This document shows positions 1,996 to 19,900 of a stretch of DNA of 64,000 nt, in pieces; the first letter of the stretch is position 1; each line of letters starts with the position of its first letter. Made by a program: the position numbers and the translations under genes. The notes beneath the pieces were generated by a model. That model worked only from the letters and a program-made list of their open reading frames with translations. It did not search any database and was not told the origin of the DNA. Location: positions 1,116,001 to 1,180,000 of the forward strand of contig NC_134031.1 of the NCBI RefSeq assembly GCF_964204645.1, read 5' to 3'. This DNA is from Tubulanus polymorphus (lineage: Eukaryota > Animalia > Nemertea).

Positions 1996-4900
1996 GTGAG
2001 TATTAGAAATGCGCACGCACACAAATCTGTTGATACATTTGTTTCTGATATATGTATATGTTTTATTCAATTGAAGAAATAAAAACCCACTATAACGAAG
2101 TAAAGCTAAAAGACAATCGATGTTTCTACTCATGCTTCAAGTCGTTTTGAAACTTTTTTGAACTGACTCTAAGCATTTGATTTGAAATGTCAAAATCCTC
2201 TATTTGTTTTTGATTCACGATTGTAGGTCTTCTATTTCTCAATTTCTACGTGGATAAACTGATGATTTATGTTTCATTCTTTCAGAGTTCGTCGTTTTTG
2301 TCATTTTGTCGTGAATCTACGTTACTTTGACTTGTTCATCATGATCGTCATTTGTGCAAGCAGCGTTGCCCTGGCAGCTGAGGATCCGGTGTTTGAGGCA
2401 TCACCTCGTAATCAAATATTGATATATTTTGATTACGTGTTCACAGGTGTTTTCACTGTGGAGATGATCTTGAAGGTATTCATGCTGTTACTGATGAAAG
2501 TTTGACTAGAATATCAACACATTTGGGTTAAATCTGAACCTTGCTATAACAAACTCTGATATAAGAATCATCAGTCTTTACAATGCTAGATTTTCATCTC
2601 AAATAAGACAATCTTAGTAATTTCATACTGGATATGACTAACTATCACTCAAACTATCGGATTTCAACAAACAGATTTCCTGGTGCCCTGAAGTCCGTTG
2701 TAAGGAGGTTTCTCTGTATTGATTTTAGGCCTTAGCTATTAAAAATTTAAAGATCATTTTTTGATTGAGGTCACCACAGTGCAACAGGGCCCAGGGTCTG
2801 ATCTGGAACCTGGGAACAGTGATATACATCAACGGGACAGCGTCAACTGTCAGACAGACATCTGAGGAGTTTTAACATAAACCGGAAATTAAAAGATCTA
2901 TTTAATGGTTTCTGAATCAAACGACTGTTAAACAGTTACTGAATGATAAAGCTATGAGAATATTGAATCGCTATTTTTGACGTTTTTTCCCCTATTCTCA
3001 TCGTTCAGGTGATCGATCTTGGAATCGTTTTCCATCCCGGATCTTACTGCCGAGATGGATGGAACATCCTGGATGCTCTTGTCGTGATTTGTGCGTTGGT
3101 CGCATTTGCTTTCAGGTATGTTTTAAAATAATGGGAAAATAGTGGTCTATGTCTTGGGAAAAAATCCTGGTTTCACAAGATTGGCTTCTTTTAGATGTCG
3201 GATAAGTTTAACTATCACTTGCGAAATTTTCTGAGATCCTTAAGCTCTAATTCGAATATACAGTTTATGTTTACACATGTGATTAAGTTTGTAAATGCTG
3301 GTGTTATTTTAGTGCTATGGAAGCAGCTAACAGGTAGTTTCTTTATGAAACTGTGCATTCAATAATCAAGATGCATTTATAATGTATTATACTGACAACT
3401 TCTATATCCGCGCATGTTGAATTGATGACTATTGCTGCATATATAACTGATTTCAAATAGAATGAACTAAACATGCTTATAAGGGTTTAGTCTGAATGCC
3501 AGATAAGCTGATCTTACCGGTCACCCCTAGAACAGTATAAATACCAGCTGATCTTACCGGTTACCCCTAGAACAGTATAAATACCAGCTGATCTTACTGG
3601 TTACCCCTAGAACAGTGTGAATACCAGCTGACCTTACTGGTTACCCCTAGAACAGTATAAATACCAGCTGATCTTACTGGTTACCCCTAGAACAGTATAA
3701 ATACCTGCTGACCTTACTGGTTACCCCTAGAACAGTATAAATACTAGCTGATCTTACGGGTTACCCCTAGAACAGTGTGAATACCAGCTGATCTTACTGG
3801 TTACCCCTAGAACAGTATAAATACCAGCTGATCTTACTGGTTACCCCTAGAACAGTATAAATACCAGCTGATCTTACCGGTTACCCCTAGAACAGTATAA
3901 ATACCAGCTGATCTTACCGGTTACCCCTAGAACAGTATAAATACCAGCTGATTTTACCGGTTACCCCTAGAACAGTATAAATACCAGCTGATCTTACAAT
4001 CTTTAAAACAGTATTTCGAACACGCGTAACGTTGTATCGATTTTCTTGAATTCTATTTCGTGCTCTGTTAAACCTAGAAGAAGCAGGTAATGAATATCAT
4101 TTTCTTTAGATATTAATAGTTTTTCCTGTGTCGTTTGTTATTTTACCGTCCGTAAAAGGCAGAAGATTCTCCCCAACACTCTGAATAAACTGCTGTGTAT
4201 TTCTGGGACTGTAAAATAGCAAATTATTTCTTTATTCCTTTAGTCTAAGGATAATATTTTTGATTTTCAATATTGTAATATCCAAGGTTCAAAGCAGCGT
4301 AAGATGTGTTTTTTTAGTTTTATCAATTTTTTCCAGCTGTTTTATTCGTGGATTCTTTATGGTTTTTTATTTCGGTGTAAAAGAGAATATTTCACCTTCC
4401 ATTCAGCATTGACTCGAGGTTTTACTGGAACCGTTATTCACAGCAGGCCGTTCCTGGGGGAAAATTGAGAATGTGAAAATTGAAAAGGGCACCAAACAAG
4501 TTGAAAGATCTGTTTTTGAGAAAAAGTTGGTTCAGATATGTCATTTCAGTGTGGATAACAATTTGTGAAAAACTCTGTCCATGCTGTAACAATAATATAG
4601 AAGATCCTGCACTCAGAGAAGAAAAATGAGTCTGAAAATGTTGCCTTTAGTTCACGATTTATTTTCAATGTTTTGACTTTATCCTAATAGTCATCTTCAG
4701 GAATACAGATAGGAGAAGGTAGCTTAGTATTTCTAAAGATGAATATAAGGATAATTGTCAAAACATCAAAAATAAATCATTAGCTAAAGGAAACCTGTTC
4801 AGACTTTCTTTTTCTTGTCCAGGTGCAAGATTTTATATATTCAGTAGGATTTTTGATTATAAAAAAAAATTCAAATTCTATCATTTTGAAAATAAGTAAC

Positions 4901-7900
4901 GGGGCATGTAAACCTATCACGTTGATTGACAGGTGGTTCAGCCCCGCCTCTTATTGGATTGGACGAATCAAGGTGGATTATTTTCTTTTTTCGGTGGTAA
5001 CCATCATATAACCTGAAACTTTCCTTCGCTTGATTTTTTAAATCTACGTTTTAAGCTTTTTCAACAACGATATTTGTGCATCTTGTTATTATTTCCTTTT
5101 CCATATAGCTATAAATCAGATGGGTAAGTTTGTCCAATGTCATCGTGCCATTGTGTTCGACCAGTTCACAGCAGTCTTTAGCTTATCCCAGACTAATCCT
5201 GAATGAACTAAAGATGTGATGATAATTCAGTAATTTGATCATCATTTAGAACAAGAGATTCATTAGTATAGTGCAGAAGGATAAGGCACTGCTTTGAATA
5301 ATGCTCAGTTACAACTCCACACTCACTCACACACACACATGAGGTCTCACACTAACATTCGATTCATTGATCCTTCCCTTCTATACACATCATATTACAT
5401 TCAATTCATCCTGATGATATTGAAGAAGATGAGAGTTTGATTTAGCGCAAAAAGAGGATAGAAAATTGATAGAATTCACTAGATGTATTTGTAAAGAACA
5501 CTTGAATGAATAATGTTTCACTAAGATGGGCTGTTGTAAATTGAAAAGAAAACTTGTGTTTAGTCGTTTAGAATTGTGCCATTGTCTCTGCGGTGAAATA
5601 CTATTCATTTTGTTTTTAGATGTTCTTAAATCTTTCAGTAAAAATTCAGTATTTAGATGAATGAACAATGACTTTGAAGATAGCGTTCTCGTAATTAAGC
5701 TACACCTACACTACCCACTGTTGGGTAGTTTTAAATCCTTTTAACTTCTAGTACTACAGAGATCCTGACCCAAATCACCCTACAAGCAATACGCCTAAGG
5801 GCAGTTAAAAAAAAACAACTTTTCACTACCTTCATTCAAAATGACTGCTAACCTTAACCCTAGCTCGTTGCCAACCCTAGCACTAGCTCACCCATCACCC
5901 ATAACCCTGTTCCTAACCCTAGGTGGCATTTCTGGGACTTGAACCCGAGACCTCCTACACGCTGGGCCAGCATGCCAACCATTAGACCACCAAGTCATGG
6001 TGATTGGAAGAGTTTGGTGGTTTGCCTTGAATGAGATGAGTGACCAGTCAATGGTGATCAGTCAGGTGTGGTTTTGACTGATCGTCAAAGGTTCTATTCA
6101 CTAACAATACCTCTGATTACAAGAAATGACCCATTGCCAGCAATTTCTATTCTAACAAAGGCAATTATCCACTAGTTAAGCAAACTCATCTTTTAGAAAA
6201 ACTAAAACATAAAAAGATACAAAATCATATTATAACCTCAAAACAATAATTTTGCTAGATTTCGCAAACAATCCTTCAAGAACGACTATTTTGCCAATTC
6301 AATCGACCATATTTTGTACAGATGATAGCATGACACTGTTTGAAAATTAGTTTTGGTGAACAGAAGTTTGGCTACTGGGGGCTTTGGTCCTGAGCAAAAT
6401 TTAGTTGAATGTAATCCTTACAGTGCAGAAGAATGGTGTTGATAATGCATCCATGTATGATTTTACTTACTGATAAACAATCTTTGTCTCCAAATAAGTA
6501 AAGGGTATAGATCAAGCTAGTCTCGGGATCAGTTGCGACGAGTACTCGATGCATGTAGACTTAGCTTAGAATGGTACCGGTATAGGAAGCATGTTTACCG
6601 GAATCTGACTGTGAATTCTGAGCAGGAGAAAATGTTTGTCAGTTTCTGCATGTGTTTCAAAACAGAAAAAAGTGGGGAAAATGCTGGTTTTGATGTGAGG
6701 AGAATTTTTAATGATTTGTAACTAAATGTGATTCATACATTAAGATCTTGTACTTAACCCAGTTAAACATTTATATCAAACATCGGTCAAATACAATCTA
6801 TTTTTCAAAACTTATTCCAAAATTAAGAATAACAGTCATTCAACTATTCAACTGGTCAAATATTTCAGGTATTTATGATTGAATCAGTTTTGATGAACTA
6901 CTGTTTAAGAGACTGATCAATTCCCAACCTAGAACTGGATCCTGTATTAACACAATTTTTTATCTTGCAGTTCTAGTTTGCACGCTGTATTTTCTGTGTT
7001 CACGTATTGATAGATTCCGTATTTTCTTTTATTATTTCAGTGGCAGCACTTCAAACAACGGAGCCACCAAGAATTTAAACATGATCAAATCATTGAGGGT
7101 ACTGAGAGTGCTTCGACCGCTGAAAACTATCAATCGCGTGCCAAAACTCAAGGTCAGAATCTACTTTTCAATTTATATCTTCAATTACGTTATAAACATG
7201 TATGTTTTGAGATGATTTTTTTTATTCAAAGAGATTTTTGTCATAGTTTTAACTAATCAGTAAAAGTTTACTCATCACATCATTTCGATGAAGGTAAGAA
7301 ACCAGTTCCTTGATTCTTGGTTAAGTTTGACTCTAAAGAGTTAAAGGGTTAATGAAGCCCCTCATCAATGTATACTGTACGATACTGAAATCAGTTCAGT
7401 TTCAATGTTTTAAACTCTCTTTGAGTTGAACATTAATCGGGAAGTTTGGAACTGGATGTTTCTACAGTAGTATCTATTTACCCCGGAGTGGATTGCCTCG
7501 GATTATAATGTACCCCGCTTGACAATGTATTCAAAAATGTCCTTCCTCCGATTCTATCCCCGCTCCAACTGCCCGGAATTTACTTATTAACTCACAGAGA
7601 ATTTATTTGTCCCGCGAAATCCGAGGCAAACTGTAACTCGCTGTTCGACGAATTCGATCATTTTTCCAACAGAAAAAAAAGAAGTTGAAAGCTCTTTTTT
7701 TTTTTACAGCTTCACGTCGATGGCTCGGTATTGACTGATACGTTGAATGTTTGTTTGAATTTCAGGCAGTTTTCGATTGCGTAGTGAATTCCGTAAAACG
7801 AGTCACGTCGATACTCGTTGTCTATTCTCTGTTCCAATTAATTTTCGCGGTTGTCGCCGTTCAGCTTTTCAACGGCAAATTTTTCTACTGTACAGATATG

Positions 7901-10900
7901 TCCAAAACGACCGCAGAGGAATGTCAGTAAGTCATGCTGCGGTGATAACTGATGGAGCATGACTAGAAATAAAACTCTCCTCCGTCCGGACCACATGTAG
8001 TCATCCAACGATGTATATATATATATATATTTTATATGTATAATTCGATGTAAAGCTCGGTTCTCGCTATAGATTTGTGTTGATGAATCGCTTACTGTTT
8101 TCGCCGCTCTGAAAAATTTAACTTAACGATTTGAATTCTCAAATTTAACTCGTACCTGTAGTAACTGTTCAGCCACAATTTGTATCGCATCTTAAGGAAA
8201 TATTAGATTTTTAAACTTTAAACTAACGCCTGTTTAGGTCCCGATGAATCTAACTTACAGCAGTATATAATTGGTATGTAACGCTAAAACAAGTCCAATA
8301 ATTTGAATTTTGCAATTTTGATTTATTGATAAGATCGTTTAGTAACATATTCTGACTTGTTAATTGCATTGAACTCTAAGACTCGATCACTTTCTGAATC
8401 ATCATTTCCAGTAACTGCCTAAAAATAAATCAACCTGAAAAAATCAGCAGAGAAAAAACATCTTCACTAGACCTGAACAATAGGGTTGTAAGATAAATGC
8501 ACAATTGCAGTAATTAAAATCATTGCATATAAACCAATAAATTTGTTGTTAGTGAGTTGATGAATCTATATTGAGAATACAGCTGTGATCCTCTAATTCT
8601 AGAATCTATAGTGAGAATACAGCTGTGATCCTCTAATTCTAGAATCTCAGTTGATTTATTATTTTTATTCCCGTTAGTTCCTGTAGTAGAATACATGTAT
8701 TCGATGATTATCATTACGAACCACTGATTGTTTCCTGTTATTAGTTTTAAAATACATCGATGTCATTGATTATTAGGTGGTAAAAAGCTTCTTCGACTGC
8801 AATCGGATACAAACATTCATGAAACGCATATTAGAACTAATAAAATGCAGTGGTATTTATAATTCGTTTCAGTATCCGAGCTGTTAAAATAGACTTTTTT
8901 TTCTGTTTTTATTATTTTTACCGAGTGTTCAGATTTGCATGTCATCTGCCTACTAATTATAACTAGCAACTGGTACAAACGTAATCATTTACAGATTAAA
9001 TTGTTACTCATTCCGGGAAAAGGTGCAACTCTGCTACAATCCAATGGGGTCCAGACAATCCTGCCTCAATGTTGACGAACCCATTAAACGATTCTTGATT
9101 GACCTATGAAAATGAATTGCACAATTTGCTACAGAATCGGGCATTTGATTTACATGCGTATGTTATGTATCTATGTACATGCATATTTTATGTATTTGTG
9201 TACATGCATTTGTTATGTATTTGTGTACATGCATATGTTATGTATATTTGCATATGCATAAGCTCTTCCTCAGAAGAATGTCTTTGTGCCTAATTTTCCA
9301 CCAAAAAAATATTTTGAGCCTCAGAACGATCTGGTCACTGTCCTCATCTGTTTTAAGATGCAGCTGTAATTGCTGTGAGTGTCGTCTGTGTGTGATTACG
9401 ATTGTAAAAGTTGATGATGTTTTTGCCTGGTGGAGGTTGATACACTTTGCTTTCAGGTTGTCTCCTGCGACCTACGACGCCTGCCCGCGTGTCCGCGTGC
9501 GTCTCATACTGTGCACTGATAACTGTCTTTATGTTAAAACAACAACAAAAAATTACTTTTCATGTCCTGGCCGTATCTGCGGACAACCTTCTCGATCGAG
9601 AGATCAAATAGCGCGAGATTAGAGCGATATTTCTCTTATACAATTTTGTTGTTTCTTGTCTAATTTCAGGCTGTATTTCAATGCCTTATCAATTCAGTAA
9701 AGAATGTACTGAACATCATGGTAGTTTACATGCTGTTCCAGTTTATTTTTGCTGTTATCGCGGTCCAGTTGTTCGAAGGCAAATTCTTTTATTGTACTGA
9801 CCAATCAAAAGACACCGAAGAACAGTGTCAGTAAGTGTGGTTACTATGGTGACAGATTTCGCAAGATTTTCGGCTCATGAAAAAAGCTTCGATTAATTTT
9901 TTTTTTTTTTTCTTTAATGTTCGACATTGAAAATTTTTACCGATTATCCTCTCGTTTTCGCAATGTGATTCTTCACACAACTAGTTAAAAATGTGGCTTT
10001 GAATTTCTTTGTGCAGTCCGTCGCTTGCTCAACCCTTTCAAATTTCTATCGTATCATTATTACTTCGTGATTTTTAAAGAATATTGATTTTTGTCTGAAA
10101 CGAAAATACGTGAAAATCTACCCACTAAATCCACAGTTCTCTAAACTCTATACAGTTAATTAACTCTCCTATCATCACTGCTTTAAACACAGTCTAATTC
10201 TTACAGTTTGTTCACCGACAATTTTTATCAGCTTCTTCAAATGATATCGTACACCCCAGTAATATAGAATCCATGCACACTAAGAATAAACAGAGTCCAG
10301 GATGTTTACCTCGGTACTTGTGCTAGTATTTATTTACCCTTTTAACAACATCTTTATAGTCTTCTAGAAGTCTCTTTGTTCTAGATTATAAATGTGTCTT
10401 GTATTGCTGATAACTATTAGGATATAGTCGAAATGTTTAGTAAACTACAGCTCAAGGAATCATTCCGCTCCCTTTCTTAATGTGTTGGATTTTATATCAT
10501 CATTACAAAACGGACTCGCAGATTCTTCAAATTATCTTTAGAAGAACTATGTATGCTCTACATAACACCCTCGACTTCATGTATTTCAAATAATTGAGGA
10601 TGAATTATCCCCTTATTTTGGCGATAACTGCATCTCTTACACTACGAGGACTTGTTCATTATTTCTGTACCTCTGTTTCTAAGCGATGCAGGTCATCCTC
10701 CTCCTTAAGATATTCATAATTCATTCATTCATGTTTGGAACGCACAGCCACATTTCCATCAAAACAACTCGGCCTTCGTACAGTCTGTGAACATTGTACC
10801 AGTGACAAAACGATCTCGGCTTAGTTAAGTTTGTATGCATGGATATCTAGTTATATATGTGTACGGTCCGTGTTTTAGCTTTATCCCCCCTCACCCATGT

Positions 10901-13900
10901 AGAGTCAATGTTTCGCATGCATTCGGCCAAACAAATATTATTCAACACCGCTTCAAAAAACGCTTTTATTGTAACTTAGATCCATCAAACTTAAAATAAT
11001 GATCGCATAAAATCGCTCTTTCTAATTTTTTCGTTTGTTTGCGACTGTTTTTACGGAGCACGAATTGTTATTTTTAGGGGGCAGTATTTCGTGTATGAAG
11101 ATAATTCCGATACGCCGAAAGTGGAAGATCGCATGTGGAAAAGTCAAGATTTCAACTACGATCACGTTGGTTTAGCTTTGCTTACGTTATTCACTGTAAC
11201 GACAGGAGAAGGTTGGCCACAGTAAGTACATGTGTGACACTGGAGTTATCAAGACTGCGTTTGTCACCGAGCAGATTTCCCCTGGATTATCATGTACGTG
11301 CCCCTGACTCTGCTTGCCATAGAGACAACTGTCTCTGATTATCACGTGCCCCTGACTCTGCTTGCCATAGAGACAACTGTCTCTGATTATCACGTGCCCC
11401 TGACTCTACTTGCCATAGAGACAACTGTCTCTGATTATCACGTACCCCTGACTCTTCTTGCCATAGAGACAACTGTCTCTGATTATCACGTACCCCTGAC
11501 TCTGCTTGCCATAGAGACAACTGTCTCTGATTATCACGTGCCCCTGACTCTGCTTGCCATAGAGACAACTGTCTCTGATTATCATGTACCCCTGACTCTG
11601 CTTGCCGTAGAGACAACTGTCTCTGATTATCACGTGCCCCTGACTCTACTTGCCATAGAGACAACTGTCTCTGATTATTACGTACCCCTGACTCTTCTTG
11701 CCATAGAGACAACTGTCTCTGATTATCACGTACCCCTGACTCTGCTTGCCATAGAGACAACTGTCTCTGATTATCACGTGCCCCTGACTCTGCTTGCCAT
11801 AGAGACAACTGTCTCTGATTATCACGTACCCCTGACTCTGCTTGCCGTAGAGACAACTGTCTCTGATAATCACGTACCCCTGACTCTGCTTGCCATAGAG
11901 ACAACTGTCTCTGATTATCACGTACCCCTGACTCTGCTTGCCATAGAGACAACTGTCTCTGATAATCACGTGCCCCTGACTCTGCTTGCCATAGAGACAA
12001 CTGTCTCTGATTATCACGTAACCCTGACTCTGCTTGCCATAGAGACAACTGTCTCTGATTATCATGTACCCCTGACTCTGCTTGCCGTAGAGACAACTGT
12101 CTCTGATAATCACGTACCCCTGACTCTGCTTGCCATAGAGACAACTGTCTCTGATTATTACGTACCCCTGACTCTGCTTGCCACAGGGCTGAATTGCCTT
12201 GGATTATCACATGCCCTACATGACAAAATGTTAGAAATTGAATGTTAAGAATTCTCCCCCTATCCGTCGTCGCTCTGATTGCTCCAGATTTCACTCGTCT
12301 GGAAGAACATTCGTTAGTCCCAAGCGGAGTCTACTATATCTATGGATATGTCATCATGTGTTTGTATGATTATAGGGTTCTACAGCATTCGATGGATGCC
12401 ACTGAGAAGGATCAAGGACCGTCGCCCGGAGCTGCTATGCAGATGGCTATTTTCTATATCGTGTTTTTCATCGTGTTTCCGTTTTTCTTTGTGAATATAT
12501 TCGTTGCGTTGATCATCATCACATTCCAAGAACAAGGAGAAAATGAACTGATCGATCAGGACTTGGATAAAAATCAGGTTTGAAAGGAAACTTGCTTCTC
12601 GAAATCAAACGGCAGCTTGTCTCGGAATCAGAGTTAGCGCTGACAACTCATCTCAAGCTCACAACCCACGTCTGCCAATTTAACTGATGATCTTATTTTC
12701 TTTTAATCATTTTTCAGAAACAATGTATCGATTTTGCGATAAACGCGCGACCACTTTGTCGATATATGCCTAAAAACAAAGATTCGTTGAAATATCGAAT
12801 CTGGCGTCTGGTTGTATCAGCTCCGTTTGAGTATTTCATCATGACTATGATCGCTCTCAATACACTTATACTTATGATGAAGGTAAGTTTTAACCATTTA
12901 TTTGGTTCTCGAAGAAAAGATTGGATTTCAAATCTAGGGCCAAAAATTCCCGGACCCAGTTCCACGATTATTGGTAAGTTTGAATACAGTTCATTTCTTA
13001 TGTAGCTCTGTTGAACTGGGTCCGGTCTTGTAGTTATGGGTAACAGAAACAATTGAACCTGTTTTCGTGAATGTTCGACTGTAATACGCTACAGAGCCCG
13101 GTTTTATGAAAAAGTTTGAACTTACAACGATCGAGTTTGAAATGTTGAAAAACTGAAGTTACCAATGGCAATTTGACAAAAATAAAATTTAGTTACAATT
13201 TTTCATGAAACTGGATCCTGAACTAGGAACAGTCTATATAGTTCAATAGCTTCAGTACTGATTCTGTATATCACAGGATAGTTTTGTGAAATTAACAAAT
13301 TGTCTCTTTCAGTGCTTATAAAGTGTATATTTGTGTAAAATGACCATCAGTGCAGACGAAACCTGAGTTATAGTGAGCTAGATTATATTCAGGGTTCTTC
13401 AACCACTAATTTAGTTGTTAATTAATATAGCGGTCAAATTTGTATCACATAATTGATGAAATTCATGTCCGATTCGAGTATACAGGGCCTTGTTTCATAG
13501 AGGGTATCAAAGTGACCTGTAGGTGTAAATCCTCAATCTGGCCTTGGTTTCAAAGACTGGGTATCAAAGTTTCCCCTTGGGATAAATCTTCAACCCAGGC
13601 CAGAGAAACCATGGTAATACTGGAGAAATTTCAAAACGTTCCCAGGGATTATTTTACCTTCATATCTGTGAAACTCGGCTCTGGTTGTTACTATTATGTG
13701 GTGCATATTTGTCAAATTCGACAGTTTTAAAATGATTATATAGCGACCATGATCTCATGTTATTGTCATAATTTTGAAGCTAGTTGAACCGAAAGTTTCC
13801 GATCAAAAGTTGTAAGTTCAGAAAGATCATTCTACTGAAGAAAGCTCATGGTCGCTACATGTGATTTGACTTAACATTTTTATAATTTGATGAATTAACG

Positions 13901-16900: not shown

Positions 16901-19900
16901 TCAAACCTTTATAGTTCTATGGTTCGAGTATTCAATACAGAGAAGTGCTGAAAAACCTAAACACCGCATTCACCGTACTTTTTACGATTGAGTGTATATT
17001 GAAGCTTATGGCCTTTGGAATTAGGGTAAGCCTGCGTCCGTACGCAAACACGACAACACAAAACAGCGTCTAGAGGGTTAGACCTAGTGTGAACAGAACG
17101 TGGCAGATACTCGTGTAGACGCGCACAACAACTACAACTACAAAATGTTCTTCGTTTTAGAAAATTTGTCGTTTTCACTATTTGTAGTACACAACAACAA
17201 CTCCATCCATCGATGTGGTCCAATTCTCAAAGCATTTTCGTGGAAGAGCTTATAGTCACGCCACATGTAGCCGTGGGTACTGCTGTACATGGTGTCACGC
17301 CATGGTGCAGTGGGTACTGCCGTACATGGTGTCACACCATATTACAGTTGGTACTCTCATTCTGCTTAATGTGGTATGACTCTAAGATTATAAATCTGTT
17401 CTATGCATTGTTCACTATAAGGTCAACCGTTCGGCTCCAACTAACCTTCTATTTTGATTTCTACCTCCCGGGGTGCCTTGAGATTTAGCATGTGGTTTTG
17501 GTGGCTCCTCATGCCCTATTGCTTCTCCGTGGTTTAGGGTTTAGTCGGTTGTTGGTCTCTTTCCTCGGGTGCAGGGTTTTCTATATTTAGCACCACTAAC
17601 TATGTTATTATCAGTGTTTATTCGGTTATTTTTTTACAAATCAAATGAACTGACAGCTTCTGATTCTGTAGTCGGAAGTTTTCAGTTACGATGGCCGCGT
17701 GAATGATTAGAAATGATGAACTATTGTACATTTTGCTGATCTCTGAAACTTTCATAATGCCTGGAGTTTGTTTCACCATCGATTCTGTACACAGTTTATA
17801 TATAGATAACTTCTGGTCTTAAGTCACAACTGTGCAACTGGAGCCTTCAGTCTAAAATCGTGGTTCTGATACAGGCTCCAGGTTCAAAGTTTCCTTACAT
17901 GATAATGATTTATGCAGTAATTCTAAAACTGCTACCACTACTGCTGCTGCTGCTACCACTGCTGCTGCTGCATCTGCGAGAGTTCATCAATTTCAGTTCA
18001 TGCGGTCATCGTTTCAATCTCGCACAGATAAACGGTTAAAGCATCTTTATCATTATTTTTCTTTTCTTTCCGTCACATGCTTCAGCACCATCAAGACCCC
18101 GCTACTAAGGACCATGCAAAATTTGAACGATACACTTTGGCCTTAGCGTATTTGAATATTGCATTCACGATTATGTTTACGATCGAATGCACCCTGAAGC
18201 TCATTGCGTTTGGACTACGGGTATGACCAGACTATCGAAGCAACAATTTACAGATATATAAATATTCATATATTTATATATATTTTTTTATGCCTTCAAT
18301 TCGACGACAGTTTTGAAATGATCGACGCGGTTTCAAAGTTGGCGAGCGGCCATTTCAAAAATTAGTCTCGTAGAAGGCATGAATTTGATGAAGCATACTA
18401 GATCACGTGTGACAATTGAAAGTTGTCTGTTATTGAAATCTTGCGTTTCAACATTCTGTTTGTCTCGTCGTCTCAATATCTCGGCTTTTTGATCTGAAGA
18501 ACGTGTGACATTTTACTGAATCGCTGCTGGACACAATTTATACACAATTCACTGATGATGAATTATCAGCATACCTTTTGATATTATTGTACTGTGAAAA
18601 GTGCTTTTGAAATGGCAGTGATACAGTCAAACTTGCACAAGTCATCATGAGATAAGTCGTCCTGAATAACTGAACTCATCTTAGTTTGAGTCCTAAGCCC
18701 CACCCCTTCCAATTCAATTTACTACTAAGTGTAATCAGTACGATGATCGTCCCAACTTCCACGACTTAAGCAGCGAGTTTGACTTAATTACTGGAAAAGT
18801 ACTGTGTCATATCTTATTGAATGCGTTTTCACATCATTTCATCGATATTAGAATGTTCTTCGCTGTCCACTAATTCCTACGTAATACCCGCCGCGACAAT
18901 TCTTCAATTTGAATGATGTTCTGAGTTCTTGGTCAAATTGCCGTCGTATACAGAAATTCTTACAATCTACTGCATGCTCAATGAGGAGTGTGATATCATA
19001 TAATAATCAAAACTATCTCCCGGAAATATCACTGTTAGCAATATCATTACACTCTTCTCTACTTCGTCTTTGTGAATGTTCTCTCTTTCTCTCTTCCAAT
19101 TCATTCAGTTCCATTTCTCGGCATGTAGTATATGCTCTTCCTGCGAAGATGGCCGCCTCGTTACTTCTCCCTATTACATCATCGTGATTAATATCTGGTT
19201 TTGATTGTGATGTCATATACAGAGGCAGCCTTCGTTTCTAGAAGGGTTTATAGTTTGTATTATGTATATATTACTAACTGCTATGAAAACCTTCAGACTT
19301 TGAAATAATGGAATGGAATTGTTAATTCTGCTAAGCTTTGGATAATGAAAGGAAATTCGATTGATTACTAGTTTCCTCAGCATGTGTCTCTTACATAGCC
19401 AGTAAAAAAACTCATAAGGAATATATCATAACCTGCTTTAGTATATGGCTGTCTGATTTTTGCATGTTTTAATTCTGGATTCTTGCTGTGGTCCATCGAA
19501 AAGTTCTAGTGGAAATCATTGTGGGCTCCATGAATATCTAAATCCCGCACGGACACAATTTCCACCGGGAACATAACTCTATCTGCATGCTAAGCCTTCT
19601 ACTACTAATATCGTATTATTTTCCTGTTAGGAATCCATTTCAAAATGGTTCAGGGTTATATCAGATTGAAATAAACACATTTTGAGCTCAAAAATATGCA
19701 TTATTCATCAGGCATTCAAATTAGAAAATAAAAACAAATGAAATATTTTTTTCTTTATTATATATTTATGCCTTCTGTTCCATTCTAATGTGTATATTGA
19801 TATGTTTGCGCAAACTTTGATTCATTTCCAACTGTTTGTTCTATATTTACTGGTGAAGGGTATTTCATATATCATACATATATCTTTCTTATTGTAGTTA

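What the first reader, a model, noticed from the sequence alone, without database searches (positions are those of the whole stretch)
8098..11064. Candidate docking-site/selector RNA pairing that chooses between IIIS5 exons A and B
Seen: both exons are followed by a shared motif, TTTTCGccGCTC-TGAAAAA (8098-8116) and TTTTCG--GCTCATGAAAAA (9867-9885), at different distances from their donors (about 170 and 35 nt). Both are imperfectly complementary to one site, TTTTTACGGAGCACGAA (11048-11064; reverse complement TTCGtGCTCcgtAAAAA), just upstream of the common downstream acceptor. Known: competing downstream docking/selector pairings enforce mutual exclusivity in insect Dscam, Mhc and 14-3-3zeta clusters. 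Inference: the same mechanism in an ion-channel gene. The duplexes are short and bulged, so chance is not excluded.
Basis: partly seen in the sequence, partly recalled or inferred. Interest (0 to 1): 0.85.

Follow-up and report, generated by a model that had tools for sequence, protein, structure and literature searches.

The report
Possible RNA switch in ribbon-worm Cav2
In a ribbon worm's only presynaptic-type calcium channel gene, two either/or exons are each followed by a short look-alike intron motif that can pair with one shared site before the next exon, as in known fly splicing switches; the match beats chance in some tests, but the pairing is weak and untested across species or in RNA.

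Summary
The window is the single Cav2 alpha-1 gene of the nemertean Tubulanus polymorphus. Exons A (7766-7926) and B (9670-9830) are old, intact 161-nt tandem copies of the IIIS5/turret exon; including both or neither creates an early stop. The motifs (8098-8116, 9867-9884) and the site at -30..-14 of the shared acceptor (11048-11064) are as described: 16- and 14-bp bulged duplexes, -15.2 and -13.7 kcal/mol.

On energy alone this is unremarkable (p 0.03-0.13), and folding models mostly favour local hairpins. A post hoc test, whether the best motif shared by both donor-proximal introns also pairs with the acceptor-proximal 50 nt, gave p 0.004 on real introns and 0.001-0.04 on shuffles. Three other exon clusters in this gene show nothing alike, and the motif is not a dispersed repeat.

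Conservation, covariation and exon A use could not be tested: no other nemertean DNA or reads were obtainable. Verdict: a credible, unproven downstream-docking candidate (about 45%) of a known kind. The scan noted the exon pair before on this same DNA (s1-510395) and a separate, unchecked long-range duplex at another gene of this genome (s1-487591).

The parts
7041..7152 (+). Upstream constitutive exon (IIIS4 and S4-S5 linker), ends in phase 0
   Evidence: Exact match to RefSeq protein XP_074655928.1 = P0272
7766..7926 (+). Exon A: IIIS5 plus start of the turret loop, 161 nt, ancestral-looking AVFDCVV type; absent from the RefSeq model
   Evidence: Open frame, AG/GT ends, best match Cav2.2 1270-1322; 72% aa identity to B; pS 0.85, dN 0.25 against B
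7930..7964 (+). Local hairpin over +4..+38 of exon A's donor
   Evidence: -15.9 kcal/mol, strongest of 50 donor regions of this gene; predicted only
7933..7962 (+). Donor +7..+36 of intron A, 16/30 identical without gaps to the same positions after B (9837-9866)
   Evidence: 1 of 560 other intron pairs reaches this
8098..8116 (+). Candidate selector A
   Evidence: 16-bp duplex with the dock, -15.2 kcal/mol; its only match within 3 edits in 294 kb, both strands, is selector B
9670..9830 (+). Exon B: IIIS5 plus turret start, 161 nt, derived AVFQCLI/FEG type; used in the RefSeq model
   Evidence: the same type is in 15/15 listed Lineus longissimus isoforms; groups with Lineus at 92/77, below the starred level
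9867..9884 (+). Candidate selector B; also folds on itself
   Evidence: 14-bp duplex with the dock, -12.7 to -13.7 kcal/mol; local hairpin -5.5
11022..11026 (+). Only YTRAY branch-point consensus in the last 70 nt (A at 11025, -53), followed by a T-rich tract
   Evidence: Pattern scan; use as branch point inferred
11048..11064 (+). Candidate docking site at -30..-14 of the shared acceptor; holds a weaker branch candidate (A11053, -25) and a GAG
   Evidence: Best common partner of both motifs in that intron beyond +250; -12.7 against at best -8.4 for 33 other acceptors
11058..11094 (+). Competing local hairpin joining the dock's 3' half to the start of the downstream exon, with the 3' AG in its loop
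   Evidence: -9.1 kcal/mol, 4th strongest of 46 acceptors; predicted only
11078..11221 (+). Shared downstream exon (domain III pore loop)
   Evidence: Exact match to P0272

Best explanation
An ancestral IIIS5 exon was duplicated with the first part of its downstream intron, including one arm of an intronic stem whose other arm lies just before the next acceptor. Each exon is now followed by a selector and the two compete for one downstream dock. Selector A with the dock loops out exon B and brings A's donor near the shared 3' splice site (A isoform). Selector B with the dock blocks that pairing and favours B, probably the default. Dual-inclusion and skip-both products would be removed by nonsense-mediated decay, so the pairing would bias the A/B ratio rather than alone enforce exclusivity. 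Shown: duplication, age, intact exons, frameshift logic, sequence complementarity and its statistics. Inferred: that the helices form, that they affect splicing, that exon A is used, and that NMD acts.
For: Layout equals the right-docker model (PMC6071210). The best motif shared by the two donor-proximal 250 nt pairs with the last 50 nt of the shared intron at -13.5/-12.7; 0.37% of 19,040 real-intron triples reach this, and the same motif gets at best -8.4 on 33 other acceptors. Dinucleotide shuffles: 2/2000, 2/1000, 0/400, 2/400, 4/100 from narrow to wide windows. Nothing comparable at three other duplicated-exon clusters of the gene. Not a dispersed repeat in 294 kb. Synonymous sites of A and B are saturated, so neutral intron homology should be gone, yet +7..+36 keep 16/30 identity. 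In a shortened intron-only construct selector B holds the dock core at about 0.6.
Against: Energy-only tests are not significant; exon A's own coding sequence pairs with the dock more strongly (-16.1). After opening local structure the net energy is -3.1 (A) and +1.0 (B) kcal/mol at 37 C, -5.7 and +1.8 at 12 C. Pair probability is about 0 in the full B intron and in constructs that include the downstream exon, and about 0.06 for A without it. Test windows were chosen after seeing the motif, and the scan has read many exon pairs in this genome, so a p near 0.004 is expected somewhere. No conservation or covariation data. No annotated isoform with exon A in Tubulanus or among 15 of 33 Lineus isoforms seen.
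Confidence: 0.45

Rival explanations
1. The motifs and their complementarity are coincidence. Exon choice is set by splice-site strength, local donor hairpins and splicing proteins, and exclusivity of the mature mRNA comes from NMD of frameshifted products.
For: Motif similarity is matched by 11% of intron pairs and ranks joint 5th among local alignments of the two whole introns. Energies are in the background range. The widest-window p is 0.04. A+B stops at codon 101 inside exon B and skip-both at codon 44, counted from the upstream exon. The motif arms are T/A tracts in an AT-rich genome.
Against: Joint p 0.001-0.005 in four of five window settings and 0.004 on real introns. The best partner falls right at the shared acceptor. 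NMD was found not to be the main factor for SCN 5a/5b (PMC12772994 abstract).
Confidence: 0.35
2. The shared motif and the shared +7..+36 segment are real paralogous elements kept by selection as protein-binding splicing enhancers or silencers; the complementarity to the acceptor region is incidental or a relic.
For: Donor-proximal identity 16/30, p about 0.002, despite saturated synonymous sites. Both motifs have self-complementary ends. Shared intronic elements acting with Rbfox2 are shown for SCN 5a/5b (PMC12772994).
Against: It does not explain the match to the dock. TGCATG occurs once in each intron, the gene-wide background rate. I recognise no known protein-binding consensus in the motif (own knowledge).
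Confidence: 0.12
3. Exon A is silent or nearly so, B is effectively constitutive, and any pairing is a leftover of the ancestral stem.
For: The single RefSeq model uses B, and 15/15 listed Lineus isoforms are B type. A has the strongest donor hairpin in the gene and a long end branch.
Against: A keeps length, frame, canonical splice sites and dN far below dS, which needs long-lasting selection on its protein product.
Confidence: 0.08

Closest known systems
Downstream (right) docking-site/selector systems of insect 14-3-3zeta, Mhc, MRP1 and Dscam1 exon 4 and 9 clusters (PMC4691838, PMC6071210)
   Same: Tandem duplicated exons; similar intronic elements after each exon; one complementary site in the last intron; short bulged helices.
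   Different: Those rest on cross-species conservation, covariation and compensatory mutants, none of which exists here. Here the dock lies within 30 nt of the shared 3' AG, overlapping or just after the likely branch region; I did not find that placement described in the passages I read. Nemertean, not arthropod.
Partial stem-loop duplication model of Ivanov and Pervouchine 2018 (PMC6071210)
   Same: Predicts two selectors plus one docker and residual similarity between consecutive introns, as seen.
   Different: No ancestral stem was found in the single-exon introns of three other lophotrochozoan-like loci (L014, L015, L038), which are too distant to be informative.
Human SCN9A exons 5a/5b intronic RNA structure (PMC12772994, preprint) and ATE1 exons 7a/7b (PMC7797038)
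   Same: RNA structure shaping choice between duplicated exons; in SCN9A, in a four-domain voltage-gated channel gene.
   Different: Different exon and element geometry; validated by minigenes and antisense oligos; SCN9A acts with Rbfox2.
Duplicated alternative exons of Cav channels: Drosophila cacophony, CACNA1A/B/E, CACNA1C/D (PMC9741552, PMC11828482)
   Same: Tandem duplicated exon substitution in a Cav gene; ten independent events are counted in human and fly.
   Different: The IIIS5 exon is single in L014, L015 and L038 and invariant among the listed isoforms of five molluscs and Owenia. My literature searches found no docking/selector system reported for a Cav gene.

Membership tests
Cav2 alpha-1 gene | Best similarity to Cav2.1-2.3 over Cav1, Cav3 and Nav; C-terminal DDWC | tested here: met
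Tandem duplicated mutually exclusive exons | Homologous adjacent exons with equal length, phase and intact splice sites | tested here: met
   161 nt each, phase 0 in and 2 out
Tandem duplicated mutually exclusive exons | Both copies under purifying selection | tested here: met
   pS 0.85 (saturated), dN 0.25
Tandem duplicated mutually exclusive exons | Each exon seen in mRNA, never together | not testable with these tools
Downstream docking/selector system | One site in the last intron complementary to an element after each exon, with overlapping registers | tested here: met
   Shared 8-bp core plus A/U helix
Downstream docking/selector system | Pairing stronger than background | tested here: inconclusive
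   p 0.03-0.13 on energy; p 0.001-0.04 jointly with motif similarity; mostly outcompeted in equilibrium folds
Downstream docking/selector system | Elements conserved across related species with compensatory changes | not testable with these tools
   No other nemertean genomic DNA obtained
Downstream docking/selector system | Disruption changes exon choice and compensation restores it | not testable with these tools
   Needs minigenes
Bidirectional pairing (srp type) | A second, upstream dock pairing with elements before the exons | tested here: not met
   Best shared upstream motifs reach only -2.6 (first 80 nt) and -6.8 (anywhere)
Spliceosome-incompatibility or steric exclusion | Mixed U2/U12 sites, or a very short intervening intron or branch point near A's donor | tested here: not met
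   All three introns have U2-type GT-AG ends; the A-B intron is 1743 nt; a distant branch point was not specifically excluded
NMD-assisted exclusivity | Exon length not a multiple of 3; dual inclusion or skipping gives a premature stop | tested here: met
   actual decay not tested

The most novel reading that the evidence does not exclude
A functional competing docking/selector system in a lophotrochozoan and in a Cav gene (none found in my literature searches), in which the dock sits between branch point and 3' AG and normally closes a hairpin over the shared acceptor. Selector binding would open that hairpin, so the same pairing would both choose the exon and license the acceptor.
Probability: 0.12. 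Interest if true: 0.7.

Novelty: new member of a known kind. Interest (0 to 1): 0.45.

Why it matters
If real, it would extend the docking/selector mechanism, known from arthropods and vertebrates, to a lophotrochozoan. It would be a clean two-exon test of the idea that duplicating an exon with one stem arm creates the control system. It would also give a handle on how an animal with one Cav2 gene switches the IIIS5/turret segment (15 of 53 residues differ; turret start net charge -1 in A, -3 in B). As it stands it is a testable candidate, not a demonstration.

Tried and rejected
As a precaution I sent no DNA of that stretch to any search tool afterwards and used Crassostrea and Lineus proteins as queries. 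The stored Tubulanus protein P0272, which includes the translation of exons there, was looked up twice by id.

No contig taken for human was fetched.

Gene DNA for Crassostrea, Tubulanus and Lineus Cav2 was not on record. Exon searches and the metagenome scan found no nemertean contig.

Rejected: dispersed repeat as source of the motif; upstream or bidirectional docking; U12 incompatibility; recent gene conversion between A and B. The highest-scoring similarity between the two introns (8166-8193 with 10209-10237) is about what chance gives for introns this long by my rough estimate, and was not pursued.

Full report
Identity. The region encodes domain III of a Cav2 alpha-1 subunit: both candidate exons match human Cav2.2, 2.1 and 2.3 best, and the genome holds one such locus. 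A model of 45 introns was built from that protein and used as background.

The exon pair. A (7766-7926) and B (9670-9830) are both 161 nt, with the same phases and U2-type splice sites, and are 72% identical in protein. Synonymous sites are saturated (pS 0.85; 5 of 16 fourfold sites equal) while dN is 0.25, so the duplication is old and both copies have been under selection. Either exon alone keeps the frame; both together stop inside B, and neither stops early in the next exon. RefSeq uses B, and all 15 of 33 Lineus longissimus isoforms I could see carry a B-type exon. B groups with Lineus at 92/77, short of firm support, which hints that the duplication predates their split. Three other lophotrochozoan-like loci have a single exon. 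Use of A in mRNA is not shown.

The observation. Selector A forms 16 bp with the dock (-15.2 kcal/mol) and selector B 14 bp (-12.7, or -13.7 with two marginal pairs); they share an 8-bp core and an A/U helix, so they would compete. The dock lies at -30..-14 of the shared acceptor. The only YTRAY branch consensus in the last 70 nt is at -53, upstream of the dock; a weaker candidate at -25 is inside it.

Is it more than chance? Separately, no. About a dozen overlapping 25-nt windows of the B intron have partners in both introns that are as good. With donor-proximal 250 nt and acceptor-proximal 50 nt windows the energy statistic has p 0.13, 0.03 and 0.07 under three real-intron nulls. Motif similarity is reached by 11% of intron pairs. 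Jointly, yes: taking the best motif shared by two donor-proximal regions and asking how well both copies pair with an acceptor-proximal region, 0.37% of 19,040 real triples reach the observed value, and this motif reaches only -8.4 on 33 other acceptors. Shuffles give 0.001-0.005 in four settings and 0.04 in the widest. The three other duplicated-exon clusters of the gene show no such signal in either direction. The motif is not a repeat family. Independently, positions +7..+36 after the two donors are 16/30 identical, p about 0.002, suggesting that part of the intron was duplicated and kept. These tests were designed after seeing the motif, and the finding was picked from many exon pairs in this genome, so the p values overstate the case.

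Would the helices form? Equilibrium models mostly say no. Net of opening local structure the energies are -3.1 (A) and +1.0 (B) kcal/mol, little changed at 12 C, and pair probabilities are near zero when the downstream exon is present. One competitor is a hairpin joining the dock's 3' half to the start of the downstream exon with the 3' AG in its loop (-9.1, 4th of 46 acceptors). Without that exon, as during transcription, selector B holds the dock core at about 0.6 and selector A at about 0.06 in shortened constructs. Published docking pairs were often predicted from elements and flanks alone (PMC4691838), and predicted strength did not track exon usage in Dscam1 (PMC12962786), so weak predicted folding counts against the model without excluding it.

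Mechanism. Most likely (0.45) is a right-docker system arising from duplication of the exon with one stem arm (PMC6071210): selector A with the dock loops out B and brings A's donor to the shared acceptor; selector B with the dock blocks this; NMD clears errors. B as default fits the annotation, B's longer pyrimidine tract, and the hairpin over A's donor, the strongest of 50. Rivals are coincidence with ordinary regulation plus NMD (0.35), a retained protein-binding element (0.12) and a near-silent exon A (0.08). An upstream dock, U12 incompatibility and a short intervening intron were tested and not found.

Comparison with what is known. It works like, at best, the downstream docking systems of insect 14-3-3zeta, Mhc, MRP1 and Dscam1 exons 4 and 9. 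Membership is not established, because the defining evidence, conservation with covariation and compensatory rescue, could not be obtained. RNA structure at duplicated exons of a voltage-gated channel is already reported for SCN9A (PMC12772994), and duplicated exons are common in Cav genes (PMC9741552). My searches found no docking/selector case for a Cav gene or a lophotrochozoan, within a library that lacks most subscription papers.

Limits. No other nemertean genomic DNA was reachable. Spliced models were searched only exon by exon; the joined search was left out.

Verdict. Observation confirmed, interpretation partly supported: a credible but unproven new instance of a known mechanism. Interest 0.45.

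Noticed in passing
window 16915-17025 and 18086-18220: Second duplicated exon pair (IVS1-S2 loop plus IVS2; 111 and 135 nt, both in frame). An apparent equivalent pair is in an unidentified lophotrochozoan-like contig, L014 9137-9271 and 10336-10422. No docking-type signal.
   Followed up: partly
L008:9238-9341 and 9843-9946 (G000:C7, upstream of the window): Duplicated 104-nt IS6 exons, 74% aa identity; no docking-type signal.
   Followed up: partly
L008:5680-5771 and a copy ending near L008:6077: Two extra domain I S3-S4 exon copies before the annotated one; the acceptor of the second copy was not defined, so its control test used an approximate boundary.
   Followed up: partly
L009:5070-5344 (G000:C7:1111070-1111344): A GT-AG intron with a U12-type donor (GTATCCTT) and branch sequence (CCTTTAAC) in domain II.
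   Followed up: no
window 3313-3333 and 5109-5123: Microexons of 21 and 15 nt in the IIIS3-S4 linker are part of the RefSeq model.
   Followed up: no
window about 11290-12190: Tandem array of 40-nt units in the intron after the shared exon; it produces long repetitive ORFs on both strands that are not genes.
   Followed up: no
window 8011-8045, 8562-8641, 9151-9275: An AT microsatellite, a 40-nt direct duplication and a 25-nt tandem repeat in the A-B intron; the microsatellite lies between A's donor and selector A and may account for part of the spacing difference.
   Followed up: no
window 7784-7801: Exon A's coding sequence pairs with the dock at -16.1 kcal/mol, better than either selector; the equivalent part of exon B gives -7.7. 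Probably chance, but intron-exon 'balancer' pairings exist in Dscam1.
   Followed up: partly
L037:318-478: A divergent IIIS5-type exon from an unidentified animal in a metagenome shares the FEG and DTE features of exon B and groups with it at 95/88; its intron has no similar motif.
   Followed up: partly
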